Source: Octopus bimaculoides (Eukaryota). Taken from it: a stretch of 64,000 bases of DNA. This document shows, in pieces, positions 14,681-62,023 of the stretch. The translations under genes were made by a program, and so were the position numbers. A model generated the notes under the pieces. That model saw only the letters and a list, made by a program, of their open reading frames with translations, had not been told where the DNA came from and did not search any database. Positions within the stretch are counted from its first letter, which is position 1; the number at the start of each line of letters is the position of its first letter. The stretch lies in the NCBI RefSeq assembly GCF_001194135.2, contig NC_068989.1, positions 85,721,111 through 85,785,110 on the forward strand, read 5' to 3'.

Positions 14681-14714
<34 letters not shown>

Positions 14715-27223: not shown

Positions 27224-28321
27224 TCAAAATCCACATTCTACCTGATTCCAATCAGTATGTGTTTTTTTATGATGACAAAGGCCATCATAGAGGAAGAATT
27301 TCTGTCCACAAATTTCACAACTGTAGGATTTCTCTTCTGTATGAATACGTCTATGGTTAGATAAAGTCTTTTTACGAGAAAATGCCTTATCACAAATATC
27401 ACAACGGAATGGCTTCTCACCAGTGTGAATTAGCATGTGGGAAAGTAGCAGACGGTTTTGTGAAAACGATTTGCCACATATTGTACAGGGGAAAGGTTTC
27501 TCAGCAACATGAGTAAATTTGTGACCACGAAACCCACTTTTGTCTGAGAATGCTCTACCACAGATTTCACATACATATGGTTTTTCTCCAGTGTGAATGC
27601 GTACATGAATAGATAAATGATTGTTTCTATAGAATTCTTTCCCACAAATCTCACATCGGTGTGGCTTTATTCCAGTATGGGTCAGTTTGTGCCTCATCAA
27701 ATTGTAATTGTTGGCAAATACTTTCCCACATGTTTCACAATGGTAGGGTTTCTCCCCACTGTGAGTTAATTTGTGGGCAGACAAGCCACTTTTTCTAGAG
27801 AATGATTTAGCACAAATATCACAACTGTATGGCCTCTCTCCAGTGTGTGTCCGCACATGAATAGATAAGTGACCGTTTCGAAAGAATCTTTTCCCACAAA
27901 TTTCACAATGGTATGGCTTCTCCCCTGTGTGAACATGTTGGTGAGAATTTAATGAACTATTTTCAGAGAAAGTTTTATTACAAATTTCACAATGATAAGG
28001 TTTCTCACCAGTGTGAATACGCTCATGAATGGCCAATTTGCTCTTGCGAGCAAAGGCTTTATCACAAATTTCACAAGTGTAAGGCTTCTCCCCTGTATGA
28101 GCACGTATGTGGTAGGACAACTGGCTCTTCCAGACAAATGTTTTATCACAAATTTCACAAGAGAATGTCTTTTCTTTCGAATGGCTGTGTTTGTGATGGA
28201 GGTAAGACCTTTTCAGAGAGAATATTTTATCACATATTTCACAATGAAATAATCTTTCTGTATTATGATTCTGTTGATGAACTGAAAAGTCCTTATTTGG
28301 TGATGATATTGTATCACACAT
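27224..28321 (-). CDS. ZF1: C2H2 zinc-finger protein, 365 aa, 12 tandem fingers, single coding exon
   Basis: Uninterrupted ORF with 12 C-x2-C-x12-H-x3-H units and mostly TGEKP-type linkers; no effector domain recognised. Confidence 0.95.
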   Translation of the reverse strand: MCDTISSPNKDFSVHQQNHNTERLFHCEICDKIFSLKRSYLHHKHSHSKEKTFSCEICDKTFVWKSQLSYHIRAHTGEKPYTCEICDKAFARKSKLAIHERIHTGEKPYHCEICNKTFSENSSLNSHQHVHTGEKPYHCEICGKRFFRNGHLSIHVRTHTGERPYSCDICAKSFSRKSGLSAHKLTHSGEKPYHCETCGKVFANNYNLMRHKLTHTGIKPHRCEICGKEFYRNNHLSIHVRIHTGEKPYVCEICGRAFSDKSGFRGHKFTHVAEKPFPCTICGKSFSQNRLLLSHMLIHTGEKPFRCDICDKAFSRKKTLSNHRRIHTEEKSYSCEICGQKFFLYDGLCHHKKTHTDWNQVECGF

Positions 28322-28655
28322 TTCCCTATGGAGGGTGACCAGTTATGGAATTCAGCAAAGCCAGCAAAATTACTGAAAATCTGAATAACTGTGGATTTGG
28401 ACAATAAAATATTTTGAGGATGTTTCTTTAACTTTTACACTTGTTCAGTTACCACTTAGATGCTTTCCATGAAGTAAACTCAGAATGTGAGTCACTCAGA
28501 GTATGAGTCACTTAGAATCACACATATATTCATTGAGTGTACAGTACACACTAAGAGTTGGCATTATAACATTCTCATTTAAAACTCACTCAAAGAAAGA
28601 CAACATTGTACTTCGATACCTCTTCAATCTGTGATTCAATGTCCATTCTTAATTC

Positions 28656-28675
28656 CTACAAAAGAAGACAAACAA
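28656..28675 (-). promoter_or_regulatory. Putative splice acceptor of the ZF1 coding exon (exon starts 28655)
   Basis: Minus strand GTTTGTCTTCTTTTGTAG|GAATT; homologous to the ZF2 acceptor TTTCTATTGTAG|GAACT. Confidence 0.6.
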
Positions 28676-29287
28676 AATAAAGTCATCATCGTAAAACTGT
28701 TGACAATAAACTATTACAAAACGGATAATAAATTTGTTATCAAGCTAATTTTGGCAACAGAACCAAGTACAAAGTAAAGTGGCACCTTAGAACCCCTAAA
28801 AAATATTTTAAAACATCTTGAAATGAAATAGACAATGATAGATATCATATTGACAAAATCCTCCGAATATGACTGGTATCTCTTATATTAACACTACACC
28901 ATCACTGTCTCACAATAGTAAAAAAGATTAAGAGACAAGAGAGCCTCTGCATGGTCACTCAACTGCTAGAAATAGCAGCAAAAAATCCCTTAAATCACAC
29001 CTTATCGTATTAAAAAAAAGAGAAAGATATTAAATAATGTGCAGTGTATTCCTATACAACTTACGTATGTTGTCATTGTTTAGTTAGCCTTGGTTGAGCA
29101 GATCTATATTCAAAAGTATTCTCACTGTAACCATCAAATATAGTTTATCTCAGACTATTGGACAATGAATCCGAAATCCCACCCCCACTTTTTTTATAAG
29201 GTAGTTCTGTCTGATTTGAGATATTTGGCAAGATGAGCTACCACAAAGAGGTTCTCGTTGGCTCGTGTTTAGAGATATATATGGGTG

Positions 29288-29431
29288 CAGTGGTGTAGCT
29301 AGGGCACGTGTCGTCGGGGCAGGCCTTGAGTTTGCCCTCCTTCCATACAGGCTTATACAACAACCCAAAAAGTGCCGCTCCCATGAGTGCATCGCCTGGG
29401 GCGGACCAGCCCCCTCCTTGCTACGTTACTG
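29288..29431. mobile_element. 144-bp GC-rich MITE
   Basis: Imperfect TIRs CAGTGGTGTAGCTAGG / reverse complement CAGTAACGTAGCAAGG, flanked by TG on both sides; superfamily not assigned. Confidence 0.55.
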
Positions 29432-30563
29432 TGTGGGTGTGTACATAGCTATAGCTGGGTGACCGGCAAGGAATGCATTGTATTGCATTGCTCTCGATCA
29501 GATCAAACAAAGATGAAAAATTTAAAAAGTTACTGTATAATTTACAACTGTTCCGATGTATCAATGGTGTGTATTTGTTTATATGCTTATTGTTCTTATA
29601 GCACTCATACGGGAGACCTATACTGAAAGACACCCGAGTTGTGACCATCCCATCTGTTTTTCTTTCGATACGTAGTGATAAGATAACGTTATCTTATATA
29701 TATCTTTTCTTCATTTATGGTGGTCAAGCAAGCAACTGACCCGCTTTCGTGAATTACATATTGTTATACCATGATAAATTATATGCTTGTTATTAAGCGA
29801 CACGTCGGACTTCACCCGTGAATGATCATCGTCGATTTTTTTTTCTTTTAAAGACGTTGTGATTTAGCTGCTTTTTCCAGCATGTTGGTGCTTCCTTTTT
29901 GGAAAATAGATGTTAGAACGACAGAGAGAGACATTTTAGCATGTCACTGTGGAGATGTTTGCTACATTTGTTGTGAAAATAGCAGAAAGGTGTTTTTTAC
30001 CCACTTTCTCTAGGTTGGAATAAAAACCATACCAGTCACAAAACATATATTTTCAAATATATGTTTCCATATTCGTTTTCTACACATTTTTTACAGCTAG
30101 TAGGCTGGTTCTTGTATTGTTTTCGTGATCGGGGCTTAAACTGTATATTGACCACATAATATTAGTCATCATTTAGACAATCTATTTAATGAATTTCTTG
30201 AAAATTTTCAGATTAAGATCTATGGTTGGAAGAAAACGAAAAAGATCCAGGAGATATTCTTAGGATTAAAAACGCAAATATTCAGTTCACAAGAAAGGTG
30301 GTCTTTATCATTATTAATTCATTATATTTAGTCGTCTAATGTTCAGTGATACTCGCCGGGTTTTTGTGAGTGTTGGTCACACACACCTAATATATACATA
30401 TATAATGTGACACCTTCAAGTAATAAAACTGGAAAATTATTTCATCGATCGATTTTATCGCTTTGGAAGACAAAAGATGCCGTAAATAAAGCAAACAATC
30501 CAAAAGCAAGGAAACCCGAATTTAGTGTAAAGAGAACAAATGTTTGTCAACAAGATTAAATAT

Positions 30564-30762
30564 AACAATGAAATACTCACAGAACTAACATGAAAAGAGA
30601 CAGAGGTGTGAATAGATGAAGAAGAATAGTTGGTTTTAATTTAACCGACGTCGTTTTTCTACATTTGTAATTTCAATAAAAGTTCCCTTGGGATCTCTGG
30701 TAATTAAGAGGACGGCGAGGTTTGTAACTTCTATAATTGACAGAGAGGGGAGATAACTACAG
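30564..30762 (-). promoter_or_regulatory. Putative promoter and non-coding first exon of ZF1 (donor GT at 30580-30579)
   Basis: Four blocks shared with 61760-62023, including minus-strand TTCT|GTGAGTATTTCATTGTT and GACAGAGAGGGGAGATAACTACAG. Confidence 0.65.
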
Positions 30763-30931
30763 GGGTACTCCTAAGATAAGAAAAACAGTTCATGTGATGG
30801 ATGAGTTTAATTCAGAATAGAATGGGATTGTAAGAAAGAGTTTAATGTAACAGATGAAAGAAAAGGGAGTGAGGGATGATGACAATTGGATCAATAAATC
30901 GATATGGAAGAAAAAAGTCTACAAAGAAAAT

Positions 30932-42004: not shown

Positions 42005-43906
42005 CTAGAAAAATATGTTGTAATCAATATCAAATTTTATGGGTTCGATGACGCGGTTCTCGGAATGTGTCGGAGGTAAATTATCAGCTTCAGGGACCGC
42101 TTCATTGGTGTCCAACTGAAATTGTTCAGCATTTGCTTCAATGTGAAGCTGTCTGTGTTCAACCAATTGGTTATATTGAAAGAACTCAACACCACAAATT
42201 TCACAAGGGAAAGCTTTCTCCTCGGCATGAGAACGTCGGTGAATTGATAAATAATCATTACGGGTGAAAGCTTTACCACAAATTTCACACACATATGGCT
42301 TCTCACCAGTGTGTACCCGTCGATGGCAGGACAGATAGTCTTTCCGAGAGAAGTTTTTACCACAAACTTCACACTGGTATGGTTTCTCACCAGTGTGAGT
42401 ACGTCTGTGAGAAACAAGGACGTGACTCTGAGAGAAAGATCGACCGCAGATTTCACATGGAAATGGCTTCTTTTCGGCGTGATTAATTTTATGGCGTTGT
42501 AAATAAGTTATGTCAGAGAAAGCCCTGTTACAGATCTCACAATGGAAGGGCCGGTTTCCTGTGTGTTTTTCCTTGTGAGCCTCTAATTTACTACTACAAT
42601 CAAATGACCTGGCACATATGTCACAGCTGAAGAGCTTCTCGTTACATTGGCTATCTTTGTGTTCTATAAAAGCATTCTTTTCAGAGAAATCCTTGCCACA
42701 TGCTTTGCAATGGAATGATGACTTCTCAGTAGAAATATCTTCTTTGAGAGGAACATCATCACAGTCTTTAGAAAATGATTTATCAAACACACCGAGAGTT
42801 AGGTCTTTGCCATCATCATGAATCACTTTGTGTTGAAGTAACGAGGCTTCATCAGAGAAAATCTTATTACATATATCACATTCAAACGTTCCTTCCCTGA
42901 AGTGGATATATCTATGACGCATTAAATTACGTTTTAGAGAGAATATTTTGCCGCAAATGTCACAAAATGGCTTCACTTTTGCATGAGTTAGCTTGTGACA
43001 TTGGAAAGTACTCTTAAATGAGAATTTTTTCCCACAAATATCACATTCGTAGGGTTTTTCTCCAGTATGAGTACGTACATGAAGGGATAAATCACATGGT
43101 CGTAAAAATGCTTTACCACAAACCTCACATAAGTGCGGCTTTTCTCCAGTGTGTGCTCTTCTGTGGTCAGACAAATGGCAATTCCGTGAAAATGCTTTAC
43201 CACAGAATTCGCAATGAAATGGTTTCTCTCCAGTATGAATACGCTTGTGCCGAGTCAACTTACAATTCTGAGAAAAAGATTTGCCACAAAATTCACAGTA
43301 GAATGCTTTCTCTGTCAAGGGCATCTGTTTCTTGAAGGTGGTTAATTTACTGCTCTCAAGAAGTGTCTTAGCAACAAAATCTGCATCAAATGTCTTCCCA
43401 GATATGAGAATCTCTTTGTTATTGGTCAGCAGGCTGTTCTCAGGGAATGGCTCTTGAGACAAATCCCTTTCAGATGTCTCTTTATCCAACTCAGTTTGTT
43501 TGTTGTTTGCCATTAAATTGCTGTCCCCTGGAAATGCCTTCCCAGATATTTCGCTATTAAAACTTTCCTCTTCATCAGACTGAGTGGAGTCTTTCTGACT
43601 TCCCAAGCCACTCTTCTCTGGATACGCCTTCTCTAACGTATCGCTGTCGGATGTTTTTTCATCTGACCCAGCTTGCTTGTAGTTGCTAGACTTATTCTTC
43701 TCGGGCAAAGTCATATCAGACATTTCACTATCAGATGATTTCTCACTTGACGGAGAGTCTTTGTGATTTGCAGACTGACTATTCTCAAGAAATGACTCGT
43801 CAGATATGTCACGAAACGTTTTCATACCTAATGGACTTCCTTCCTGACTGGTAGACTGACAGTTTTCAGTAAATGCCTCATTAGACATGTCACTGTTATA
43901 CTCCAT
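42005..43906 (-). CDS. ZF2: C2H2 zinc-finger protein, 633 aa; acidic repeat N-terminus, 12 canonical fingers plus one C2HC-like finger
   Basis: Single uninterrupted ORF; fingers start at aa 202 (43303); TGEKP linkers; short non-finger C-terminal tail. Confidence 0.95.
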   Translation of the reverse strand: MEYNSDMSNEAFTENCQSTSQEGSPLGMKTFRDISDESFLENSQSANHKDSPSSEKSSDSEMSDMTLPEKNKSSNYKQAGSDEKTSDSDTLEKAYPEKSGLGSQKDSTQSDEEESFNSEISGKAFPGDSNLMANNKQTELDKETSERDLSQEPFPENSLLTNNKEILISGKTFDADFVAKTLLESSKLTTFKKQMPLTEKAFYCEFCGKSFSQNCKLTRHKRIHTGEKPFHCEFCGKAFSRNCHLSDHRRAHTGEKPHLCEVCGKAFLRPCDLSLHVRTHTGEKPYECDICGKKFSFKSTFQCHKLTHAKVKPFCDICGKIFSLKRNLMRHRYIHFREGTFECDICNKIFSDEASLLQHKVIHDDGKDLTLGVFDKSFSKDCDDVPLKEDISTEKSSFHCKACGKDFSEKNAFIEHKDSQCNEKLFSCDICARSFDCSSKLEAHKEKHTGNRPFHCEICNRAFSDITYLQRHKINHAEKKPFPCEICGRSFSQSHVLVSHRRTHTGEKPYQCEVCGKNFSRKDYLSCHRRVHTGEKPYVCEICGKAFTRNDYLSIHRRSHAEEKAFPCEICGVEFFQYNQLVEHRQLHIEANAEQFQLDTNEAVPEADNLPPTHSENRVIEPIKFDIDYNIFF

Positions 43907-44123
43907 TTTTATAGGGTGGGTGATGATATTCTAGTTGAAACTGTGTTGGTCAGCTCACATAAAATAACTGTACATTGATACCAGTTAGTCCTGAGAGATG
44001 ATGTCCTGTCCACTTCAGTTTAAGGAACGTTAACAATCTACATCTTAAAGTTGCTGCTTCAGTAATTCACCATTGTTCCAGGTTACATCTTCAAATGACA
44101 ATTCAGCTTCCTCTTAGCAGTTC

Positions 44124-44145
44124 CTACAATAGAAAGCAAACAAAC
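44124..44145 (-). promoter_or_regulatory. Putative splice acceptor of the ZF2 coding exon (exon starts 44123)
   Basis: Minus strand GTTTGTTTGCTTTCTATTGTAG|GAACT, 217 nt upstream of the ATG; mirrors the ZF1 acceptor. Confidence 0.6.
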
Positions 44146-44557
44146 ATGTTTCTTATCAGAACAAGAATAAACAGGGAAAGCAAACTATCACACATTACAT
44201 ATTTAAATATTACTCTAAACAATTTTATTTTGCTACACCAGACATTGCATATAGCAGTATATATGTCTGTTTGTACACACATATTCTTTCTCTCTTTATC
44301 TCCATACACACACTCACACACAAGACTTAGAAATATGTTTGGTGTCTAATGTGCTGGGTATTGTATATTTTAAAGGCAGTAGAGCACTGGGGATTTGTGG
44401 AAAACGAGCTGGCTGCTGCACAAAACATTTAAAACAATGACATAGAGACCCCCAAGCCAAAAAGAGAACTGCTATGTGATCACATGAGTTGTTAGAAATA
44501 AAAGCACAATCTTCTTCATATCACATCCTAACTTACACCGTCTCAAAAGAAAAAAAA

Positions 44558-44588
<31 letters not shown>

Positions 44589-47500
44589 GAAAAGGTGTGG
44601 GAGGGACACACTGACTAGTATAATTCTAAATAAAATATGTCTGAATAAAAAAAAAAAAGTCAGGGTGGTTACGGATGGAAAATCTTTAACCACAGGTTTG
44701 CTAGATCACATCTGAGCCAAGATTAAACAACCATGATAGAGAAAACATCCCTTGTTGGCAAAGTAATCCCTCATTTAAAAACACTCAAAAGAATTTGATA
44801 GGGAAAAAATCAACTACTACATTTAGTCAATCAAGTGTTTACATAGACATCTTAGTAACCTGTGCAGTTCCTCTTTTAGAGATGGCAAATAATCAGTGCA
44901 GTAAGACATGGCTGCTAAATTGAAGCTCCTTTGCCTTCTTGGCTTTCTGATTATTTCCTCAACCAAATAGTAATATTGATTTTTTTTTTCTTCTCATGGC
45001 ACACAGCCAACTTTTTCCTAAGAAACAGTCAATTTACAAGCATTATTTCACTGCCCCTTTGGAGATGAATGCTAAAGTTAGGCTCTAGTGGATATGAAAC
45101 CCAAAGCAAAACAGCGCTAACCTAAATTCCACAAAGTATCTAGGTTGCTTAACAACGGACTAACCCCAAATCACTGCATCAGAATAAATTCTGGTTTCAA
45201 ATTTTGGTACAAAGCCAGCAATTTTGGGGGAGGGAGTCAGTCGATTACATCGACCCCAGTGTTCAACTGGTACTTATTTTATCGACCCTGAAAGGATGAA
45301 AGGCAAATTAGACCTCCACAATAGAATAGATATTAACAAAAATAGGTGCAGGAGTGGCTGTTTGGCAAGTAGCTTGCTTACTACCAACCACATGGTTCTG
45401 GGTTCAGTCTCACTGCATGGCACCTTCGGCAAGTGTCTTCTACTATAGCCTCGGGCCAACTAAAGCCTTGTGAGTGGATTTGTTAGACAGAAACTGAAAG
45501 AAGCCTGTCGTGTATGTAATGTTATGTAAAGTTTGTCTCAAACTGACAATGCCTCCTTGAAGCACTTTCAGAACAAGGATTTCTGCAAGTTGTCCATAAT
45601 TAAAAATCAGGCTCCTGATAATGTTGTTTTTGCCCACTAGTGACCCCCTATAAAATGCAAGAGTTGACATACCACCAGCCATGTTGTCCAACTAGTAAAG
45701 AAGTGTGCGCACATAATATTTTGTATATTGGATGCCCAGCTTTGGCCCTCACTTGACCCAGGACCAGCTCTGTCAAAAAGATGAGCATACAAATGACAAC
45801 CACATCTTCTCATTGTCCACAAAACTCTGTAGCCACTGCAACCTCAGTACATGCTTGTGCATAATCAACTATGGTATACCAAGCCCTTCGTGAAAAGGAC
45901 ATGAGTAGCAGATGGACTCCCATTTCTAGTGGAACATGTCCCTTACAAAAAGTGAAAAAGCAGATGGTCCAGCTTAATCAGATGAAAATTAGAGCAAAGC
46001 ATGATGGGTGGGTGGTAATAAATAATGGATGAGATGTATATAATTGCTAGGTTTGCTTGGCATTTCAGGGATGTCTCATTTCTGAGTGAGACTAGAGAGC
46101 CTGCTTGTAACCTTGTTCCAGTTCCTATTTGTCTAATGGTCTGGCCCAAACCAGATCTTAACAGAACCTTTAGTACAACACCTCATGACATGTACTACTT
46201 AACAAGTACTTCTGTCAGCATCACACTAATAATTTCTTCGGTTTCTGTTGTGTCAGTACTCTGTATATGATCACATGGCCTTCCCATGTATCAACAACAA
46301 CAACAGCAGTAGTTGCTGCTGTTTATTTTCATCTGAATCCAAAAACCTAAAATTTTTAGTATAAGGAATGTGATTTTGAGAGATTCATGCCGTTCTCAAA
46401 GTCTTTTTAGTAAGAAAAAATATATAGAAAGATCCTAGATGTATTATGGAAATCTTTTTCTCTTTCTGCCTTAAAGTGGGAGGGGGTACTTGCAGGTGCA
46501 AATGGGAGTTCACCAGGTAACAAATTTATTGATTCTCTTTTGCTGTCCATGTCTGACCCTGGATAGATGAAAGGTAAGGATAACCATGACAAGATTTGAA
46601 CCCAGAATGCAAACAGCCTGAAAGAAATACTGCAAAGTATTGTTTCCAAAGTTTTAATAATTTGAATAGTATTGATTTTAAATTTTTTGGCTCAAGGCCA
46701 ACAATTTCAGAGGAGGAGGTAAGTCAAATCAACCCCAGTATTTAACTGGTACTTATTTCATCAACCCTGAAAGTATGAAATTTGAACTTAGGATGTAAAG
46801 GCAGACAAAATACCTCCTTAATGATTCTAATAATATTAACAACAACAACAATAGTTTCAAATTTTGACACATAGCCAGCAGTCTTTGAGGGGAGAGGGGG
46901 AAGTCGATTACACAACCCCAGAACTTTCTTTATCAATTCCAAAAGGATGAAAGGCAAAGCCGACCTCAGCAGAATTTGAACTCAAAATGTAAACAGTCAG
47001 AAGAAACGCTAATGATATGCTAATGATTCTGCCAATTCACCACCTTATTCTGGCACCCTAATAATAAGAATAAACAATAATTAATAATTATATTAATTGG
47101 TTGCTTTAGAGTACTAAAGACTTGTTTTTGTTTAGTCTAAAACAGTGTACTTTTGTGAGGTTCACTCGCATCTTTTCTCAAAAGGGTTTTAGATGCATGT
47201 GAAACGGTTATTAACCAGGAACAGGAAAAAATATACATCACAGATTTTTTTTTTTTAATTAAATGTGACATCAGTTATTTTTCTCTCTCCTTCTCACTCA
47301 CTCACTTTCTCTATCTCCGTTAGCAAAAAAAAAAAAAAAAAAAAAAAAATGAAGGGAAAATAACGATAATTATAAAAATGCCCACCAGGGGTGAGTTAAA
47401 TTCAGAAATAGGAGGAAGTTAACAAGATAACAAAGAATTTATTCTAATTCTCTTTTACTGTCCATGTCATTAACTCCACCAACCTAACAAGAGCGTTAAT

Positions 47501-49022
47501 AACTATTTCTTCTCACTAGGCATAAAGCCAAATTTTTCTGGGAAAGAGAGTTGAAATCGACTGAAGTAAAATAATAATGGCCTACACACATGCGCACTCA
47601 CACATTTTTCCTCTCTTCTTTATCGACCATGGATGGATAAAAGGGGAAAGTCAACCCTCGAGGGTGTTTAAATGTAATAGCAAATAGCGTTGGCCTGCTT
47701 GGCTCCCTCATGTCTACTTTAACTAACTCCTCTATTACTCTAATAATCTATATTGATATAGCACACTTTCATTACACTGACTGTGTGCGTGCGTGTGTGC
47801 ATGCTTCTTTCTCTGATTAGGTAGAACTCTGTGTGTGTGTGTGTGTGTGTGTGCACATGAGAGAAAAACAGCTATGTTCAGACTCAAGTGTTCTTAAACA
47901 GAGAGGTCACAGTATGTTTGATGTGTCTAAATCAGTGCGTGTGTGCATGTGTGTGTATCTGAATGGTTGAAACAAGGAACAGATCAGATACAGAGAGAAA
48001 AAAAAGTGGGAAGGGAAAAGTAAGGAAAGCTAACATAAAAAGAATCCCAGAATTTATGGTCTTGTGCCAATATAAGAAATCACCATCATCATCATCATCA
48101 TCATTACATGAATGGATTTAATTGACTCACTCATCTCCCCAAATTCTTGGCTCTCTGCCCACATTGGAAACAATTATCATTATTATCATCATTATTATTA
48201 TTACGTTCTGACTTCAAATTCCACTGAGGTCAACTTTGCCTTTCATCCTTTTGGAATTGACGAAATAAGTACCAGTTGAGCACAGGGGTTGATGTAATTG
48301 ACTAGCCCCCCCCCCCTCTTCCAAAATTTCAGGCTTTGTACCCTTACTGTAGAAAGAAAGGATTATTAATACTACTATTACTACTAATAATAATAATAAA
48401 GTTGGGGGAGGGGAGGTACTGGTAGAATTGTCAGAACAAAGGACAAAATGCCTTAGGTAACAACATTTATGCTCTGAGTTTAAATTCTACCAAGATCAAC
48501 CTTACCTTACATCCTTCCAAGGTCGATAAAATATAATACCAGTTGTCATTTATCCCCACTCCCAGACCAACCTCGCCGAGAGACCTGTGGATAAAGATAT
48601 TCTAGCTACTATCATCACCTTTTTAGGACTACACTGTTTAATGTGTCCTTTAATTTGACACAGTAGGGATGTAATCGGAGGGTGTCAGGCTGCTACTTTT
48701 AGGAGCACAAATGAATGCATTGAAGCTCACTCAATTATCTTATTAAAGAACCAGTCATATAATCCTCAGAAGTCTTTTGTCGGCAGCAGCGATTTTATCT
48801 CGTATCCGAGAAGTCATTATTGTAAAATCGTTAGCATACTAGATGAAATGCTCAGTGGTATTTTACCCATTGCTACATTCTGGGTTCAAATTCCGCCGAG
48901 GTCAACTTTACATTTCATCCTTTCAGGGGTCGATAAATTAAGTACCAGTGAAACATTGCGGCCGATGTATTCAACCAGTCCTCTCCCCACAAATTTCAGG
49001 CCTTGTGCCTATAGTAGAAAGG

Positions 49023-49060
<38 letters not shown>

Positions 49061-49712
49061 GGCAGCAAGCTGGCAGAAATGTTAGCACATCAGACAAAAT
49101 GCTTAGTGGCATTTTTTTCTGCTTTATGCTGTGAGTTCAAATTCCACTAAGATTGACTTTGCCTTTTATCCTTTCAGGGTCGATAAAAAAAGTAACAGTT
49201 GAGTACTGATGTCAATACAATCGACTAAACTCCTCCCTGCTATTTTCGGGCCTTGTGTCTATAGTAGAAAGGATTATTATAAGAATCACCACTTCTGCCA
49301 TGTTGATGAAATTCGGGCATTTGTTTCCCTAATGTATCACATTCCTGACAATGAAATCTTTTCATTTTAGCTTTGGTCTTTTGCTTGGTACAATAATAAC
49401 ATTATGGAAAAAAGAATGGCAAGCTACTTCAACCAACTAAGGACTAAAATAGGAGATAAGTTGGACCACAGAAGGAGACAGGTCAAAATAGGAGACTCAG
49501 TACATTAGCCTGAATCTGTCAGCTGCAACAACCAAATTTCCTCAACCACACTTTACCAAAGAAGACTTTACTATTTGATACATCATATAATGTAGACCGA
49601 GACTCTTCCAGGGGCACAAAAAATGCTCACAGCTTCAATACTTGGATCATAGACCTGACAGAACAGAGTTGATGATGGGGCAATATAACAACAGCTATAC
49701 CTTGCTACACAC

Positions 49713-49780
<68 letters not shown>

Positions 49781-49814
49781 NNNNNNNNNNNNNNNNNNNN
49801 NNNNNNNNNNNNNN

Positions 49815-49859
<45 letters not shown>

Positions 49860-51360
49860 AGAGAGAGAGAGAGAGAAAAAATGTATGCAGATGTATATAC
49901 ACACACACACTTATACACAGATATACATAGATCATTGTTTAACATCTGCTTTCTATGCTGGCATGTGTTGGATGGTTTGAGAGGAGCTGGCAAACCAGAG
50001 GACTGCATCGAGTTCTACTGTCAGCTTTGGCATGGTTTCTACAGCTGAGTATCCTTCCAAATGCCAAAATTTTACAGAGTGCATTGGATGGTTTTACATG
50101 GCACCTGTGTTGGTGAGCTCGCCAAATAACTTACATGACCAAAAACCCACAACCGAGGGGATGTACCAGGTGTCTTGCTATAGAGGAGATACATGGTTAC
50201 TACTTCAGTTGAGGAGAGAGAGAGAGAGAGAGAGAAAGAGAAAGAGAGAGTGAGAGTATGTTGATGTGCCAGGGCATAGCCTCAAGGTACACAGTGAATG
50301 TAAGTGAAATGGTACAGAGAATTGCACAGGATGAATGAGCAGGGAGTTCAAGAGAGTACAATGTGGAAGAGAGGAGGTACAGGGAGTGGGGGGGGGCATC
50401 GAGTGGTGAACACAGCTATATATGGGGAGTGGTAGGATAGCTATGATACAGCTCGCAGGGAAAGAACATGAGAGATGACAAAGCAGCAGTGGGCTGCAGG
50501 AGCAGGAGGGTGGAAGAGAGACAAGCATAGTGAATGAAGAGTTGTAGTTTGGTTGTGTGAATTAAGGTTACTTAATGTTACATGTGAGTAGACAGTGCAT
50601 AATGCACAACGCTTCCAGAACTCAGTTTCACTGAGGTGGGTGGGTCTTCTCAAGAACTTCAAATCACCAGACATCTTGGGTCATTGTCATCTTCTCCATG
50701 AGTCACACTTGAGAGCAGCTCATTACTTCATCCCATGTCTTCTTGGGTTTCCTTCTAGTGGAGGGTCCATCAACTTTAAGTGATTGGCACTTCTTTATAC
50801 AGCTGTCTACTATATATACACATATATGTATACATCTGCATACACACACATACATGTATATGTGTGTGCGTGCGTGTGTATATATATATATATATATACT
50901 CTTTTTTACTCTCTTTTACTTGTTTCAGTCATTTGACTGTGGCCATGCTGGAACACTGCCTTTAGTCGAGCCAATTGACCCCAGGACTTATTCTATCGGT
51001 TTCTTTTGCCGAACAGCTAGGTTACAGGGACATAAACACACCACCATCGGTTGTCAAGTGATGTTGGGGGGACAAACACAGACACACAAACATATATACG
51101 ACGGGCTTCTTTCTGATATCAGAATACCCAACAGTTGAAGGAAGCTGTTTCGGCAGCTTTTGCAACAATCACCAAAGCACACCAAATCATTTTGTGCCAC
51201 GAAAATGATGGTGTTCATACAAACCTTCTCAATATGTGACAGTGTCAATGAAAATAAATATACTAAAACCAGTAACTGTGTTTGATATTATATTGTTCCT
51301 GCTCTATTGTTCTTATTACTTTTCGGTAGTGGGTGACAAGACTTTTGGACCACCCTCGAT

Positions 51361-51485
51361 AGGGTGTCCACAAAGTCTGGGTACATGGGATTAACACATA
51401 CTTTAAGAAATTATTACTTCTAATATTTAATTGTTTATGCTATAATTTTATTTAATCCATGTACCCAGACTTTGTGGACACCCTG
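51361..51485. mobile_element. Tc1/mariner-type MITE
   Basis: Perfect 28-bp TIRs AGGGTGTCCACAAAGTCTGGGTACATGG (51361-51388, 51457-51484); right end ...CACCCTG followed by TA. Confidence 0.85.
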
Positions 51486-51660
51486 TATAATGAAATATCA
51501 AAAATACACAGATTGTAATATATTTCCTACTTTCGTAATAGTTATTCAACGCTATCCATTATACATAACACTGCAGGCTTTTAAGACAATTTAAGCCCCA
51601 ACTTTGAGATGTGCATTACACATATGGTTTATAATATTTCATATACCACATAATACATGG

Positions 51661-51843
51661 CAGTGGTCCGTCGCCTTTTTTCACTTGTACACTTATATTC
51701 TTTAGAAAAGTTGGCGGCACACCTGAACTTAAAGTATAACTAAAAGTATAGGGGAAAAAATTATATTCAGGTTACACTGCAGCACATATAGTATCGTCTC
51801 GTGGCACACAAATGTGCCGCGGCATACCCGTTTCGGAGCGCCG
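51661..51843. mobile_element. Decayed hAT-like MITE
   Basis: Starts CAGTGGTCC and ends GGCACACAAATGTGCCGCGGCATACCCGTTTCGGAGCGCCG, resembling hAT subterminal ends; no TSD found. Confidence 0.4.
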
Positions 51844-52054
51844 AGAGTATTATATAGTACACGATTGCGTCCTGCAAGGGGAGATGACTCCGATCATATT
51901 GGAGTTATCTCTCCTGGTTGTTTAAATACAAAACGTCACCTGTCAGACGACGGGTAACAACTGAGAATACGTTACAATTAATTGATAGTTAAAAAGTATT
52001 ATTGCTATTAATAATTAAAAACGACTAATTTATTATATCTTATTTTAATCATGT

Positions 52055-52429
52055 ATCTTTTACTTGCTTCAGTCATTGGACTGCGGTCGTGGTGGAGCAC
52101 CACTTCGAAGGGTTTCAATCAAACAAATCGACCCCACTTCTGAGATTTTAAATCTGGGACTTATTTTATTAGCTCCTTTTGCTAAATCGCTAAGTTACGA
52201 GGACGTAAACAAACCAACTCCGGTTTTCAAGCAGTTGGGTGAGGATAAACACACATTGATGTTTCTACATATACGATGGGCTTCTTTAAGTTTCCATCAA
52301 CCAAATCCAATCACAAGTCTTTGGTCGGCCAGGGGCTATTGTAGAAGACACGTATCCAAGGTACCACCCAGAGAGACTGAACCCGGAACCTTGAGAAGCA
52401 AACTTCTTACCACAGCCATGCCTGCACCT
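52055..52429 (-). mobile_element. SINE family A
   Basis: Reverse-complement match to family A from tail to head. Confidence 0.8.
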
Positions 52430-52567
52430 AATAACGAATAACGGAATGGTTGGCGCTAGGAAGGGCATCCAGTTGTAGAAACCATGCCAAATCAAACTGG
52501 AGTCTGGTGCAGCCCCTCAGTTTACCAGCCCTGGTCAAACAGTTCAACCCATGCCAGCAAGGACAAC

Positions 52568-52601
<34 letters not shown>

Positions 52602-53279
52602 AATTAGTATTCATGCTTTTATCTTATACAAGCACCATGAAATTTGAATAAAGTAAAATTCCAAATTATTGCACCTATGTACAAGTGTCTCCTGTCATAT
52701 GAAGGGCAACACATTAGATATGCAAACCAAGAAGGAAGCCTCTGTGTGATAACTCAACTTGCTTGATATAACAGTTAAAATCTCTCATAAATTTCACTCA
52801 ATCAGATTTAAAATGAAGGGCATTGTAGCAATCAATTATCCCTGTGAAGGTGAACTTGGTGAACTTACTCTATTCTCAATACATTAGATAATGTATCTAA
52901 GATACACAATATCTGAATAAACGATAGGATGGTCACAGCTGGGACAAACATCAGTGGTCAGTGTGTGTTTGTGTAAGAGAGAGAGAGAGAGAATGGGAGA
53001 GAGAGAGAAAGAGAGAGAAAGTGAGAGGCAGACAGACAGAAAGAAAAAGAGAAAATAACCATTACAAGACGCACAGTTTAATAGCTGCCTCTTTCTTGCT
53101 CTTAAGTTTGGAGATCAGCTATGTCTTTCATCCTCTCGGGAGTTGATAAAGTATCAATCCATGACAGTAGACTAACAGGTTTGTCAGAGCATGGATGAGT
53201 TGCCCTGCAACAGCTATTTCTGGTTCTGTGCATCATGAGTTCAACTCCAGCTGTGTTCCTGAGAACTGGTGACACTTCT

Positions 53280-53512
53280 TATTTCTTTATTGCCCACAAG
53301 GGGCTAAAAATAGAGGGGACAAACAAGGACAGACAGAGGGATTAAGTCGATTACATCGACCCCAGAGCATAACTGGTACTTAATTTATTGACCCCGAAAG
53401 GATGAAAGGCAAAGTCGACCTCGGCGGAATTTGAACTCAGAACATAACGGCAGACGAAATACCGCTAAGCATTTCGCCCGGCATGCTAACATTTCTGCCA
53501 GCCACCGCCTTA
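53280..53512 (-). mobile_element. SINE family B, full length with target-site duplication
   Basis: Minus-strand head GGCGGTGGCTGGCAGAAATGTTAGC...GAGTTCAAATTCCGCC and core CCTTTCATCCTTTCGGGGTCAATAAATTAAGTACCAG; 16-bp TSD AACTGGTGACACTTCT at 53264-53279 and 53516-53531. Confidence 0.92.
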
Positions 53513-53919
53513 GAAAACTGGTGACACTTCTGTGAAGAACAGTAATTGACAGATAGTATCAACCAAGGAAACACAGCTTCCTTTATTCAATGAGAACATT
53601 GACTGTCACCATTACATGTCTCGTTCTTCAATGAAAGTCATAGCCTAAGCCTGGCATTGTTACAAACGTCTATACAAAACTTTAAAATCTGAAAGAGGAA
53701 ATGCATTAAAGGGATAGAAATGTATTAATTCCCAATAATGATAAAAGGTTGAATAAAATCCACTGATGCTAGTCAAAAATAAGAAGCTACTCCATTCATT
53801 GTAAATCATACAAACAGGCTTTGTCTAACGGAAAGGCATATTTTCACTCATACATCGAACAGTGAAGGGTTTACTTATCTGTTTTAACGCCTTGTGTGTA
53901 ACCAAAATATATTTGCATG

Positions 53920-54237
53920 CTTGGTCAAGTTCCTTTCGAGTATTTTGGCCTCACGGAGGCAATAACCAAGACCTTTGGCATTATGTTGTGCTTGAGTAGA
54001 AGACCCATCAAGCCGAGCAAAATCGCAGTCGTGACAGATACCGGTGTCGTGCCAGTGGCACGAAAACACACCCATTACGCTCTCAGAGTGGTTGGCGTTA
54101 GGAAGGGCATCCAGCCATAGGAAACCATGCGAAATCAGATGGAAGCCTGGAACAGCCTTCCAGCATGCCAGTCCAGTCAAACCGTCGAACCCATGCTAGC
54201 ATGGACAACAGACGTTAAATGACGATGATGATGATTC
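53920..54237 (+). mobile_element. SINE family C
   Basis: GTGGTTGGCGTTAGGAAGGGCATCCAG...GCTAGCATGGACAACAGACGTTAAATGACGATGATG tail. Confidence 0.75.
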
Positions 54238-56208
54238 ATAAACAATAGTCCTGTTGGACATCTAAGCTCAAACAAAAGCTAACAGGCCAATCAAAGGAGC
54301 GACGGATACACATTCAAAAAGATATATAGTATACATACAAGTATTCTATAAAATTTTCAGCAGTATTTCAATGACTAAGTACCTTACAACCTTGTATTTT
54401 GTATCATGGCTTATAAGCTAAATGAAAATAAAAACAACCAAAACTTGACTACTTGAAGCCAATTCATGCCATCTCCGCAGTAGCTGCAAAACCTGCTGAT
54501 AACAATGACACCTGCTGTTGACTCAGCCCCCTCTCAAGTCACATCAACCTTCTGTAAAAGGGAGACAAGGACCAGTGTGGTATCAGCACTACTAATACAA
54601 AATGACAAATTACCATCTATACTTGCATTTCCATCACAACAAACTCATCTATCATCTAATACATGGAAATGAAATTAACAATGTGTGGTATTAACTTTAT
54701 GATTTTCATACATTGTGATGTCGATTTTATAAAATATATATTTATATGAAGATTATAGTGTTTTATGTAGTTTTGTTTGTGTATGGTGTTTATATTTCTA
54801 ATATTGTCTGAAAATAAAATATTAACCACCATCAATACGTAACCAATGACAATTGGATGCCCATCCTGCTGCTTAATGAGGCTCATTGCACATATTATAA
54901 ATACACACACATTGAATGTACATACAGACACACACACACACACACACATCATCATCATCATCGTCGTTTAACGTCCGCTTTCCATGCTAGCATGGGTTGG
55001 ACGATTTGACTGAGGACTGGTGAAGCCGGATGGCAACACCAGGCTCCAATCTAATTTGGCAGAGTTTCTACAGCTGGATGCCCTTCCTAACGCCACATAT
55101 ATATATATATATATATATATATTGGTTCTATTCAATGTATTTAATGTTACTTTTTTGACACAAACAGGGATTATCTGGAGGAGCTACTTAAGGAAGGATT
55201 TTTACAGCTAGATACTGTTTTTCTGTCATCAACCATTATATGTTTTTTTTTTAATGAAAGAATTTTTTTCATTCCAGAGGAATTTAAAATTACAGAGCTA
55301 CAGATTTGTTAACAGGTGGCACCCCAGCCACAAATGGTGATATCATCATCTGTATCCGGAGATCAATGTAAATTGTCAATATTCACAAAGACAAAGGCAA
55401 CAAACTGGCAGAATCATTAGCACACCAGGCAAAATACTTAGCGACATTAAGTCTGTCTTCATGTTCTGAGTTCAAATTCTGCTGAGGTCAACTTTCAGTT
55501 TCCACCTACCAAATCCACTCACAAGGCTTTGGTTGGCCTTAGGCTATAGTAGAAGACATTTGCTCAAGGTGCCACGCAGTGGGACTGAACCCGGAACCAT
55601 GTGGTTGGTAAGCAAACTACTTACCACACAGCCACATGTAAAATAAAACAAAACAGGAGAGGTTGTGTATAAAATATCTAGTTACACCATCTTACATGGA
55701 TTTCACTAACAAAGAATGATTAGTTATCTAATGTAAACAATATAATGAATTTGCATTGTCATCTCTTCAGAAATGTATAATTCTCATTTGTAATATTGCT
55801 GGATTAGTGACAGTGTTACCATCACTGGATTAAGCAAATAAAGTTGTTTGCTTACCCAGAGATGGCAACACTGGCCAGCAACATAATGAATGAGAATTAC
55901 CTGATTCTGAAGATTTGACAACATTTGCAAATCAAACATATAATTGATATTATATAACTGATAATCGTTCTTTGTTAATGAAACAGGTGCAAGATGATGT
56001 AATTAAATATATTACAAACAATCTCCCCTCTTTTGTTTTCTATGCCCTGTGACATACCTGACTATGGATTTCAGTCAAATGATATGAGAACTATAACACA
56101 AGTCCTACTTAGTTTCACTTCAAACATATGAGAATACACATGGCATTCTAAATGACCTATTTCATGCATGCTAGCACGGAAAATACCTGTAGAAATGATG
56201 ATAATGAT

Positions 56209-56250
<42 letters not shown>

Positions 56251-56686
56251 CGAGTAGTGTATGTGGTGCATGTTTGTGTGTGTATATGTATGTATATCAT
56301 CATCATTTAACGTCTGCTTTCCATGCTGGCATGGGTTGGACGGTTTGACAGAAAACTAGTAAGCCAGGGAGGGGGCACCAGATTCCAATCTGATTTGGCA
56401 CGGTTTCTATGGCTAGATGCCCTTCCTAACACCAACCATTCCAAGGGGGTAGAGGGCGTTTTTTATGTGCCGCCAGCACAGGTGCTATTAACCTGACACC
56501 AGCATCAGTCACGACTACAGTCTCACTTGGTTTGACAGGTCAACGCAAGCATGGTATATCATGGAGGGTTTTTGCCACCTGTCACTGCCTCCATGAGGCC
56601 CAACACTCAAGTGGTGCTTTTTATGGGCCACTGACATGGGTGCCAGTCAGACAGCACTGGCATCAGCCATGACTACGATTTCACTT

Positions 56687-56744
<58 letters not shown>

Positions 56745-57022
56745 TACATTAGTTTATGCAAGATGAATGACCAAGAGTGCTCAATACATATAAGAGTTGT
56801 AGAGGATATGTTTTCATTTTTTTTTCACTGAAACTAAATAACTGAAAGTAAGCCTCAGAACTGCCTGAAGATTGCAGAATATGAAACTCAAGATGAAAGA
56901 CAGAAATCTCAATTACAATTTCAAAAAAAAAACAAAAACAAAAACAAAAAAAACTGCACACAAATGCAAACATGTAGAAACATGAATATATATGCGTATA
57001 CATACACTCATAAATACTTATG

Positions 57023-57087
<65 letters not shown>

Positions 57088-58392
57088 CCATCTTCCATAC
57101 TGGTATGTGTGTGCCTACAGATATCTCTACACACACACACACATATATATACAGATATACAAACAAACAGACAGTCATGGCCATGTGGTAAGAGGTTTGC
57201 CTCTCAGCCACATGCTTTCAGGTTCATTCCCACTGAATGGCACCTTGAGAAAGTGACTTTCCTAAGGTGGCATGGGAAAGTGACTTTCCCAGGATATAAT
57301 CCTGGGTCCAGCAAAGCCTTATGGGTAGATCTGATAAACAGAAACTGAAAGAAGCTTGTCATATTTATAGGTGTGTGTGTGTGTGTGTGTGTGTTTCTCT
57401 CCTTCCTTTGACCTAACATGTTAGCTGTGAATGAATTCTAACCTTATTCAAGAGGTGTCCTTCATTTTCAGTCATCTGTGGAAACATGTCTGGTTTTGGA
57501 GAAATATTACTTTATTTGGAAACAGCCATAGAAAATCTTCTTCATCAAATTATGACACATGAGAGCATGGAAAGGTGAATGTTAAAACAATGGTATTGAA
57601 TATATANNNNNNNNNNNNNNNNNNNNNNNNNNNNNNNNNNNNNNNNNNNNNNNNNNNNNNNNNNNNNNNNNNNNNNNNNNNNNNNNNNNNNNNNNNNNNN
57701 NNNNNNNNNNNNNNNNNNNNNNNNNNNNNNNNNNNNNNNNNNNNNNNNNNNNNNNNNNNNNNNNNNNNNNNNNNNNNNNNNNNNNNNNNNNNNNNNNNNN
57801 NNNNNNNNNNNNNNNNNNNNNNNNNNNNNNNNNNNNNNNNNNNNNNNNNNNNNNNNNNNNNNNNNNNNNNNNNNNNNNNNNNNNNNNNNNNNNNNNNNNN
57901 NNNNNNNNNNNNNNNNNNNNNNNNNNNNNNNNNNNNNNNNNNNNNNNNNNNNNNNNNNNNNNNNNNNNNNNNNNNNNNNNNNNNNNNNNNNNNNNNNNNN
58001 NNNNNNNNNNNNNNNNNNNNNNNNNNNNNNNNNNNNNNNNNNNNNNNNNNNNNNNNNNNNNNNNNNNNNNNNNNNNNNNNNNNNNNNNNNNNNNNNNNNN
58101 NNNNNNNNNNNNNNNNNNNNNNNNNNNNNNNNNNNNNNNNNNNNNNNNNNNNNNNNNNNNNNNNNNNNNNNNNNNNNNNNNNNNNNNNNNNNNNNNNNNN
58201 NNNNNNNNNNNNNNNNNNNNNNNNNNNNNNNNNNNNNNNNNNNNNNNNNNNNNNNNNNNNNNNNNNNNNNNNNNNNNNNNNNNNNNNNNNNNNNNNNNNN
58301 NNNNNNNNNNNNNNNNNNNNNNNNNNNNNNNNNNNNNNNNNNNNNNNNNNNNNNNNNNNNNNNNNNNNNNNNNNNNNNNNNNNNNNNNNNNN

Positions 58393-58431
<39 letters not shown>

Positions 58432-59586: not shown

Positions 59587-59651
<65 letters not shown>

Positions 59652-61759: not shown

Positions 61760-62023
61760 AACAATGAAATACTTACAGAAAGAACATGAATGGATGCTGA
61801 AGTGAGATAAAGAGGCGTGAATAGATGAAGCTGTTTTTCTTTTGGTTTTGGTATTGTGCTTTTTTAAAATTCAGCCGACATATAAGAGAATAAAGTAGCT
61901 TTGTACATTTGTAATTTGAATAAAGTTCCCTTGGGATCTCTGAGAATGTCGAGCCATTATTTAAAGGCCGAGATGTTTCTAACTTCAACAAACACGGAGG
62001 ACAGACAGGGGAGATAACTACAG
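61760..62023 (-). promoter_or_regulatory. Putative promoter and non-coding first exon of ZF2 (donor GT at 61776-61775)
   Basis: Paralogous to 30564-30762; minus-strand TTCT|GTAAGTATTTCATTGTT donor; GACAGACAGGGGAGATAACTACAG at 62000-62023. Confidence 0.6.

What the first reader, a model, noticed from the sequence alone, without database searches (positions are those of the whole stretch)
30564..30762. Duplicated promoter and first-exon module links the two ZF genes across 31 kb
Seen: four colinear blocks are shared with 61760-62023. (a) A minus-strand donor TTCT|GT(G/A)AGTATTTCATTGTT. (b) AGAGG(T/C)GTGAATAGATGAAG, 19/20 identical. (c) TACATTTGTAATTT(C/G)AATAAA(A)GTTCCCTTGGGATCTCTG, ~40 nt with one mismatch and one indel. 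(d) GACAGA(G/C)AGGGGAGATAACTACAG, 23/24 identical. The spacers have diverged. Each module lies upstream of a ZF gene that has a matching TGTAG|GAA(T/C)T acceptor. Inferred: the unit of ZF cluster duplication is promoter, non-coding exon, intron and one coding exon, and these motifs are under selection as a family-wide regulatory cassette.
Basis: partly seen in the sequence, partly recalled or inferred. Interest (0 to 1): 0.75.

Follow-up and report, generated by a model that had tools for sequence, protein, structure and literature searches.

The report
Shared 5' leader of two octopus zinc-finger genes
Two old, neighbouring zinc-finger gene copies in the California two-spot octopus keep a nearly identical ~200-base non-coding stretch at their likely start, which is the ordinary kind of conserved start region that duplicated genes share, and a small sample gives no sign that it is a family-wide switch.

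Summary
The window is Octopus bimaculoides chromosome CM046609.1. It holds two minus-strand C2H2 zinc-finger genes, each with a single coding exon.

**Homology.** Window 30557-30762 and 61753-62023 are homologous: 171 of 202 ungapped columns are identical, blastn E is 1e-13 and 3e-9, and the local-alignment z is 25.6. These are the only two copies in the 64 kb. Both lie upstream of a ZF gene, in its sense orientation. Each ends in a GTRAGTAT donor. Each is paired with a homologous strong acceptor (28655 and 44123) ahead of the coding exon.

**Divergence elsewhere.** The DNA around the module cannot be aligned. The coding sequences are 46% identical as protein, and their fourfold sites match at the random level. 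The module is therefore an island of conservation between ancient paralogues.

**Best reading.** It is the ancestral core promoter plus non-coding first exon, kept under constraint. It carries the only two TCCCNNGGGA (COE/EBF-type) palindromes in the window and a conserved upstream ATG.

**What is not supported.** The "family-wide cassette" claim. The module is absent from four loci of two other octopod ZNF genes. Transcription start, splicing and factor binding remain inferences.

Ordinary biology, modest interest.

The parts
30557..30762 (-). Module A: the conserved 5' module of ZF gene 1. It is the putative core promoter plus non-coding exon 1. The exon would end at 30581, and 30557-30580 is the conserved start of the intron.
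   Evidence: Homologous to 61753-62023.
61753..62023 (-). Module B: the conserved 5' module of ZF gene 2. The exon would end at 61777, and 61753-61776 is the conserved start of the intron.
   Evidence: It is bounded by a (CAG/CAA)n run upstream and a (GA)n run in the intron.
30739..30762 (-). Block d, CTGTAGTTATCTCCCCTCTCTGTC. It is the 5' limit of homology and contains AGATAA on the plus strand. Its partner is 62000-62023.
   Evidence: 23/24 identical. Homology stops abruptly upstream of it.
30656..30704 (-). Block c, with the palindrome TCCCTTGGGA at 30684-30693. Its partner is 61900-61947, with the palindrome at 61927-61936.
   Evidence: 44/49 identical. TCCCNNGGGA occurs only at these two places in 64 kb, against 0.37 expected by chance. 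The motif is the EBF/COE consensus according to PMC4312928 and PMC5498135.
30596..30621 (-). Block b, CTTCATCTATTCACACCTCTGTCTCT. Its partner is 61805-61830.
   Evidence: 23/26 identical.
30575..30594 (-). Conserved upstream ATG (30589-30591) and donor TTCT|GTGAGT, with the junction after 30581. Partner: ATG at 61785-61787 and junction after 61777.
   Evidence: The intron side matches GTRAGTAT in both copies. If spliced as predicted, the upstream ORFs read MLVLN* and MFFLNC*, which I read directly from the sequence.
28656..30580 (-). Predicted intron 1 of gene 1 (1,925 nt).
   Evidence: It lies between the conserved donor and the conserved acceptor. Its interior cannot be aligned with the intron of gene 2.
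44124..61776 (-). Predicted intron 1 of gene 2 (17,653 nt). It contains dispersed repeats and three N gaps.
   Evidence: There is no ZF remnant and no other module copy inside it.
28594..28676 (-). Conserved pyrimidine tract, the acceptor TTGTAG|G (exon starts at 28655) and the first ~60 nt of the next exon, gene 1.
   Evidence: Homologous to 44061-44144 (67% over 84 nt, E = 6e-5; z = 13.9).
44061..44144 (-). The same acceptor region in gene 2 (exon starts at 44123).
27224..28321 (-). CDS of ZF gene 1: 365 aa, 12 C2H2 fingers, single coding exon.
42005..43906 (-). CDS of ZF gene 2: 633 aa, 13 C2H2-type fingers and a roughly 200-aa N-terminal region with no detectable relatives. Single coding exon.

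Best explanation
The two modules are the homologous 5' ends of two anciently diverged, tandemly arranged C2H2 zinc-finger genes of Octopus bimaculoides.

**Proposed anatomy.** Each module is most likely a compact core promoter followed by a non-coding first exon. If transcription starts near block d, that exon is at most about 180 nt in gene 1 and about 250 nt in gene 2. It ends in a strong GTRAGTAT donor. It is spliced across 1.9 kb (gene 1) or 17.6 kb (gene 2) to a conserved acceptor that lies 334 nt or 217 nt ahead of the start codon of the single coding exon.

**Origin and conservation.** The ancestral gene already had this layout, and tandem duplication copied the whole unit. Since then neutral sequence has been randomised, while the module has been held at about 85% identity by purifying selection.

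**Likely targets of that selection.** These are transcription-factor sites, the best candidate being the EBF/COE-type palindrome TCCCTTGGGA in block c, with a GATA-like AGATAA in block d. Leader features are a second target: the donor, and an upstream ATG whose short reading frame ends just past the splice junction.

**Shown:** homology, colinearity, orientation, splice-site consensus, and the lack of similarity in flanking and synonymous sites.

**Inferred:** transcription start, splicing, factor binding, and any translational role of the upstream ORF.
For: - Organism and gene calls: the two ORFs are called genes on GCA_001194135.2 CM046609.1. Both are C2H2 proteins with no other domain.
- There are only two module copies in 64 kb, E = 1e-13 and 3e-9. 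Of 202 aligned columns 171 are identical, and z = 25.6.
- Both copies lie upstream of the only two ZF genes in the window and on their strand.
- Colinear homology continues at the acceptor region. The donors are GTGAGTAT and GTAAGTAT, and the acceptors have long pyrimidine tracts followed by TAG|G.
- Neutral benchmarks are randomised: fourfold sites are 12/40 identical against 28% expected, and adjacent intron and UTR segments give z of about 0.
- TCCCNNGGGA occurs only in the two modules, against 0.37 expected. This motif is the EBF/COE consensus.
- There is no Rfam family, no tRNA and no convincing shared RNA fold, so a small structured-RNA gene is unlikely.
Against: - No transcript, TSS or chromatin data could be consulted, so exon and promoter status rest on sequence logic alone.
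- The exon side of the donors (TCT|) departs from the MAG consensus.
- No positionally conserved TATA or initiator element was identified.
- CpG observed/expected in the modules (0.65-0.88) is only at the 86th-89th percentile of the window. Stronger CpG-rich spots lie at 29.6-29.9 kb and 62.9-63.3 kb, and these could be the real or alternative promoters.
- Conservation runs 24 nt into the intron and stops sharply at both ends. That pattern would also fit a mobile element or a conversion tract.
- Aligned fingers of the two proteins need not be orthologous, so the age of the duplication inferred from the CDS could be overestimated. The randomised introns argue the same way independently of this.
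Confidence: 0.6

Rival explanations
1. The module is exon 1 and promoter, but its high similarity comes from gene conversion or ectopic exchange between the paralogues after the genes diverged. On this view it reflects concerted evolution of the 5' end, not selection on particular motifs.
For: Aligned columns are uniformly about 85% identical, and the test for clustering of matches into blocks is only borderline (p = 0.057). The ends of homology are sharp. The paralogues lie in tandem, 31 kb apart, in the same orientation.
Against: The supposed tract would coincide almost exactly with the functional unit, running from block d to 24 nt past the donor. A second, separate island sits at the acceptor. 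Seven or so indels totalling 73 columns have accumulated while 14-18-nt runs stayed perfect. No conversion is visible in the adjacent intron or in the CDS.
Confidence: 0.13
2. The module is a low-copy dispersed repeat, either a fragment of a mobile element or an exapted one, that happens to lie upstream of both genes or was recruited there independently.
For: The homology boundaries are abrupt, the length (~200-270 nt) is typical of SINE- or MITE-sized elements, and divergence with indels resembles that of ageing repeat copies. The window is rich in dispersed repeats, and one SINE-like family has 12 or more copies, one of them 300 nt upstream of module A.
Against: There are only two copies in 64 kb. 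Both are in the sense orientation upstream of the only two ZF genes. I saw no terminal inverted repeats, target-site duplications or tRNA-like boxes on inspection. The acceptor region downstream is homologous too, so a spliced leader predates the duplication. The module is absent from four other octopod loci that are full of repeats.
Confidence: 0.12
3. The module is a conserved cis-regulatory element that is not transcribed as an exon, such as an enhancer, silencer or boundary element. On this view the GT donors are coincidental, and the genes start transcription elsewhere.
For: It has a palindromic factor-type motif and several short invariant blocks. The core-promoter signature is weak. CpG-rich spots lie elsewhere.
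Against: Both conserved acceptors need an upstream donor, and the module supplies a GTRAGTAT donor in the right orientation in both genes. Donor-like sequence is conserved in both copies.
Confidence: 0.1
4. The module belongs to plus-strand transcripts. On this view it is a terminal exon with the AATAAA contained in block c, antisense to the ZF genes.
For: AATAAA is conserved on the plus strand in block c, and ...ACAG|A on the plus strand could be read as an acceptor.
Against: There is no pyrimidine tract before that AG; the sequence there is A-rich. Block d is conserved downstream of the would-be poly(A) site. I found no plus-strand gene upstream of either copy. AATAAA is common in DNA with 37% G+C.
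Confidence: 0.03

Closest known systems
Tandemly duplicated C2H2/KRAB zinc-finger gene clusters of vertebrates (expansion by tandem duplication: PMC2443715; the gene layout described here is from my own knowledge)
   Same: Whole-gene tandem duplication. One or more 5' non-coding exons sit upstream of a single large exon that encodes all the fingers. Paralogues keep related 5' ends.
   Different: There are no KRAB or SCAN effector exons here. The paralogues are much older, with saturated synonymous sites, yet the leader is about 85% identical. The octopus expansion is independent of the vertebrate one (PMC9068888).
Conserved sequence element (CSE) promoters of clustered protocadherin variable exons (from my own knowledge)
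   Same: Each paralogue in a tandem array carries its own promoter with a short, nearly invariant motif shared across the array, while the surrounding DNA diverges.
   Different: In that system the motif is shared by essentially all members, binds CTCF, and the first exons splice to common constant exons. Here only two genes are shown to share the module, no CTCF-like motif was recognised, and each gene is complete. Cephalopod protocadherins also lack the shared-exon system (PMC9068888).
COE/EBF (Collier/Olf/EBF, UNC-3) target sites, palindrome TCCCNNGGGA (PMC4312928, PMC5498135)
   Same: There is a perfect 10-nt core palindrome, TCCCTTGGGA, in both modules and nowhere else in the window. COE factors act in neurons, and from my own knowledge of Albertin et al. 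2015 octopus ZNFs are expressed mostly in neural and embryonic tissue.
   Different: This is a motif match only. Binding, the presence of the factor and the expression pattern of these two genes are untested. The site may lie inside the transcribed leader and not upstream of it.

Membership tests
C2H2 zinc-finger gene (Pfam PF00096 / PF13465) | Tandem C-X2-C-X12-H-X3-H fingers joined by TGEKP linkers | tested here: met
   There are 12 fingers in gene 1 and 13 in gene 2. Pfam E-values are 1e-85/5.5e-61 and 5.8e-65/1.4e-47, and no KRAB, SCAN or BTB domain is found.
Spliced non-coding first exon | A donor matching MAG|GTRAGT on the gene strand | tested here: met
   TCT|GTGAGTAT and TCT|GTAAGTAT. 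The intron side is perfect and the exon side is weak.
Spliced non-coding first exon | A matching downstream acceptor ahead of the CDS, with no coding potential across the junction | tested here: met
   A pyrimidine tract followed by TAG|G at 28655 and 44123, homologous between the genes. Frames opened by the upstream ATG stop within 10 nt of the junction, which I read.
Spliced non-coding first exon | Junction-spanning transcripts | not testable with these tools
   No nucleotide search of octopus RNA-seq or genome data is available. An exact-protein look-up found only the genome record.
Core promoter | A mapped transcription start, or positionally conserved TATA or initiator elements | tested here: inconclusive
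   A/T-rich TATA-like strings occur between blocks d and c but at different offsets. CpG observed/expected is 0.65-0.88 against 0.33 for the window, which is the 86th-89th percentile. No TSS data were available.
   It is absent from L003 and L004 (P0067, O. sinensis and O. vulgaris), L005 (P0069, O. vulgaris) and L006 (P0073, Argonauta hians). Each locus includes 10 kb upstream. The sample covers only two gene lineages and includes no other O. bimaculoides locus.
Dispersed repeat / mobile element | Many copies without gene association; terminal repeats or target-site duplications | tested here: inconclusive
   There are only 2 copies in 64 kb, both associated with genes. None occurs in four other loci. 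I saw no terminal inverted repeats or target-site duplications on inspection. The genome-wide copy number cannot be tested here.
COE/EBF binding site | Palindromic core TCCCNNGGGA | tested here: met
   30684-30693 and 61927-61936 are the only two matches in the window, against 0.37 expected. The consensus comes from the papers read. Actual binding cannot be tested here.
Structured non-coding RNA gene | An Rfam match or a conserved fold with covariation | tested here: not met
   There is no Rfam hit at gathering score and no tRNA. The consensus fold is -6.9 kcal/mol over 287 columns with one compensatory pair.

The most novel reading that the evidence does not exclude
The module is the signature of a ZNF subfamily, not of the whole expansion. 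Its members would be co-regulated through a deeply conserved promoter and leader cassette made of a COE/EBF-type palindrome, a GATA-like site and an upstream ORF that spans the splice junction. This would give coordinated neuron-type-specific expression, an octopus counterpart of the protocadherin CSE promoters.
Probability: 0.2. Interest if true: 0.55.

Novelty: new member of a known kind. Interest (0 to 1): 0.3.

Why it matters
Coleoid cephalopods carry one of the largest C2H2-ZNF expansions known: about 1,800 genes in octopus (my arithmetic from 165 genes = 9% of the total) and 2,785 stated for squid (PMC9068888). Almost nothing is known about how these genes are regulated.

A leader and promoter module that has stayed about 85% identical while synonymous sites and introns were randomised is a concrete, short sequence that can be tested. 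It offers a handle for three things:
- defining ZNF subfamilies by their regulatory ends instead of by their fast-evolving fingers;
- asking whether a COE/EBF-type factor drives their neural expression;
- correcting gene models, since the predicted first intron of gene 2 is 17.6 kb.

In itself, a conserved 5' end shared by tandem paralogues is expected biology.

Tried and rejected
- **Whole-protein search with gene 2.** It was swamped by vertebrate ZNFs and yielded only three octopod proteins (P0067, P0069, P0073).
- **Search with the non-finger N-terminus of gene 2.** No relatives at all, so no orthologue could be fetched.
- **Chimeric query of the neighbouring PRMT6 C-terminal exons plus the gene 1 N-terminus.** The aim was to reach the syntenic region or transcripts in other octopuses.
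- **Cluster look-up of both ZF proteins.** Neither is in the collection.
- **Exact-pattern scan of metagenome contigs with 21 nt of block c.** No match, as expected for an animal sequence.
- **The octopus genome paper of Albertin et al. 2015.** It is not held in the library, so statements about it rest on my own knowledge.
- **Rejected on evidence:**
  - a structured RNA gene;
  - a hidden ZF pseudogene between gene 2 and module B;
  - an N-terminal coding extension from exon 1, because stops follow the junction;
  - a conserved mini-exon 2. The GAAGAG|GTATCG and GAAGAT|GTAACC donors are weak, and no conserved acceptor precedes the CDS, so the two-exon model is simpler;
  - CTCF-like or ZNF143-like motif readings of blocks d and c, rejected by inspection;
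  - weak similarity 130-240 nt upstream of block d (z = 3.8), which is a T-rich low-complexity match at different offsets.

Full report
**Where we are.** Both large ORFs of the window are called genes on Octopus bimaculoides assembly GCA_001194135.2, chromosome CM046609.1. Window position 1 corresponds to about 85,721,111 on that chromosome. The window has 37% G+C, eight N gaps and a CpG observed/expected ratio of 0.33.

It holds exactly two C2H2 zinc-finger genes, both on the minus strand and both with a single coding exon:
- Gene 1: CDS 27224-28321, 365 aa, 12 fingers.
- Gene 2: CDS 42005-43906, 633 aa, 13 fingers after a roughly 200-aa N-terminal region that has no detectable relatives.

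No finger remnants occur anywhere else in the window. A PRMT6-like gene lies on the plus strand at about 10.6-21.7 kb.

**The observation.** A global alignment on the gene strand shows one continuous homologous unit, 30762->30557 (206 nt) against 62023->61753 (271 nt). In order along the unit:
- block d (23/24 identical);
- block c (44/49 identical; an 18-nt and a 14-nt perfect run);
- block b (a 14-nt perfect run);
- TTCATGTT;
- the donor, followed by 24 nt of conserved intron.

Of 202 ungapped columns 171 are identical, and the length difference comes from about seven indels. Against the whole window, blastn finds these two copies and no third, with E = 1e-13 and 3e-9. The local alignment score is 25.6 standard deviations above shuffles.

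One nuance applies. The "diverged spacers" are mostly insertions and deletions. Where the copies can be aligned they are about 85% identical throughout, and a column-shuffle test for block-wise clustering of matches is only borderline (p = 0.057).

**Link to the genes.** Both copies lie upstream of a ZF gene and in its orientation. Homology between the two 5' regions is colinear. After the module comes a weak intronic block, 28937-29009 against 44462-44535. That block is also similar to 52732-52813, so it is probably repeat-derived. Next comes an 84-nt island covering the pyrimidine tract, the acceptor TTGTAG|G and the first ~60 nt of the next exon: 28676-28594 against 44144-44061 (E = 6e-5; z = 13.9). 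Last comes AATATCATCACC at the CDS start.

They give introns of 1,925 and 17,653 nt. The long intron of gene 2 is filled with dispersed repeats and gaps, and it contains no other module copy.

A conserved acceptor needs an upstream donor, and the module is the only homologous candidate in each gene. This is the strongest argument that the module ends in a real exon.

I considered a third, 36-nt mini-exon, because GAAGAG|GTATCG and GAAGAT|GTAACC align with each other. I rejected it because those donors are weak and no conserved acceptor precedes the CDS.

The leader is non-coding. In gene 1 an in-frame TAA lies 21 nt upstream of the start codon. The conserved ATG 9 nt before the exon 1 donor opens frames that stop within 10 nt of the junction (MLVLN* and MFFLNC*).

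**Is the conservation more than neutral?** Yes.
- The two proteins are 46% identical.
- Codon positions 1, 2 and 3 are 64%, 67% and 42% identical, against 28% expected for random third positions.
- Fourfold-degenerate sites in identical residues match at 12 of 40, which is the random level.
- DNA identity across finger arrays is never above about 73% over 150 nt or more.
- Independently of any doubt about finger orthology, the 250 nt of intron adjoining the module, the last 250 nt of intron 1 and the rest of the 5' UTR align no better than shuffled sequence (z = 0.1, -0.2 and 0.2).
- The 250 nt upstream of block d share only a T-rich low-complexity match at different offsets.

The module and the acceptor are therefore islands in randomised DNA. 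Purifying selection is the simplest cause. A conversion tract that happens to coincide with the functional unit is the main alternative.

**What the module contains.** Block c carries TCCCTTGGGA. The pattern TCCCNNGGGA occurs only at these two places in 64 kb, against 0.37 expected. It occurs in none of the four outside loci. It is the palindromic consensus of EBF/COE factors (PMC4312928 and PMC5498135).

From my own knowledge, block d contains a GATA-type AGATAA, and block b in copy A contains a T-box-like AGGTGTGA that copy B does not keep. These are weak leads in AT-rich DNA.

The donor matches GTRAGTAT in both copies. That accounts for part of the intronic conservation but not for the next 16 nt.

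No Rfam family, tRNA or convincing common fold is present. CpG content is raised only modestly, to an observed/expected ratio of 0.65-0.88.

**Is it family-wide?** This could be tested only in a small way. The protein index is swamped by vertebrate ZNFs, and no nucleotide search of cephalopod genomes is offered. Three octopod ZNF proteins were retrieved, and their loci were fetched with 10 kb of flank on each side:
- P0067 in O. sinensis and O. vulgaris (L003, L004);
- P0069 in O. vulgaris (L005);
- P0073 in Argonauta hians (L006).

None contains the module, any of its blocks, the acceptor-region homology or the palindrome. The "family-wide cassette" reading is therefore not supported by this sample. 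A subfamily-restricted cassette remains open.

Within the window the evidence points the other way: two copies, both associated with genes.

**Comparison with what is known.** The expansion of C2H2 genes in coleoids and their clustering are established (PMC9068888). Tandem duplication as the mode of ZNF expansion is established in mammals (PMC2443715). A duplicated unit that includes the promoter and the 5' non-coding exon is what whole-gene tandem duplication produces. The noteworthy part is the degree of retention between very old paralogues. The nearest functional analogy is the protocadherin variable-exon promoters with their conserved sequence element. Membership of that kind of system, meaning a motif shared across an array, was tested here and not met beyond these two genes.

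**Verdict.**
The duplication unit and the constraint are supported. Promoter and exon status are plausible but unverified. The "family-wide" claim is not supported.
- This is a new example of a known kind of feature. Interest is modest (0.3). It would rise to about 0.55 if a genome-wide search shows a ZNF subfamily defined by this cassette.

Noticed in passing
window 10604-21718 (+): There is a PRMT6-like gene here. The public 213-aa product (P0121) maps only to 16317-21718. Clear methyltransferase N-terminal exons, for example ...KVIADIGAGTG at about 10604-10762 and others near 11.6 kb and 13.7 kb, lie before the N gap at 15125-16099. The model therefore looks truncated by the assembly gap. 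The protein search also found no PRMT6 orthologue from other octopuses.
   Followed up: partly
window 19535-19699 vs 20024-20140 (+): There are two similar 'THW' exon-like segments of the PRMT6-like gene: LTHWPQNVLVCQQPSISV and LTHWSQVVLYVHEPFQTV. Only the second is used in P0121, and the 177-aa entry P0122 uses neither. This could be a duplicated or alternative exon.
   Followed up: no
window 31072-31222 and at least 11 other places (e.g. 5014-5143, 9289-9421, 14242-14391, 14961-15090, 24784-24917, 36537-36665, 45344-45491, 55506-55633): A SINE-like dispersed repeat of about 130-150 nt, 72-78% identical between copies and present in both orientations. Several copies abut N gaps. One lies about 300 nt upstream of module A.
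   Followed up: partly
window 30929-31182 and 32438-32687: A 254-nt inverted repeat, 95.7% identical, brackets the assembly gap at 31223-31751. It could be the terminal repeats of an element or an assembly artefact.
   Followed up: no
window 29600-29900, 51630-52050, 62900-63300: Unique CpG-rich spots with observed/expected 1.2-1.6, against 0.33 for the window. One lies inside predicted intron 1 of gene 1, and one lies about 0.9 kb upstream of module B. They could be unmethylated islands or alternative promoters. They are not homologous to each other.
   Followed up: partly
window 30589-30591 / 61785-61787 (-) with 28649-28655 / 44112-44123: A conserved upstream ATG lies 9 nt before the exon 1 donor. 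After the predicted splice it gives 5- and 6-codon reading frames (MLVLN*, MFFLNC*) that end just inside the next exon. Block c also holds an ATG, followed by TAG in copy A and by a 14-codon frame in copy B.
   Followed up: partly
window 61650-61745 and 62024-62065: Module B is bracketed by microsatellites: (GA)n immediately inside the predicted intron and (CAG/CAA)n immediately upstream of block d. This marks where homology with module A stops.
   Followed up: no
window 43907-43933 vs 28299-28313 (-): The sequence AATATCATCACC is coding in gene 1 (residues 4-8). In gene 2 it lies upstream of the start codon. The two genes therefore appear to use different start codons relative to the ancestral sequence.
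   Followed up: no
L006 6537-8934 (+), Argonauta hians: A reverse-transcriptase (RVT_1) gene fragment lies 1 kb upstream of the Argonauta ZNF45-like gene.
   Followed up: no
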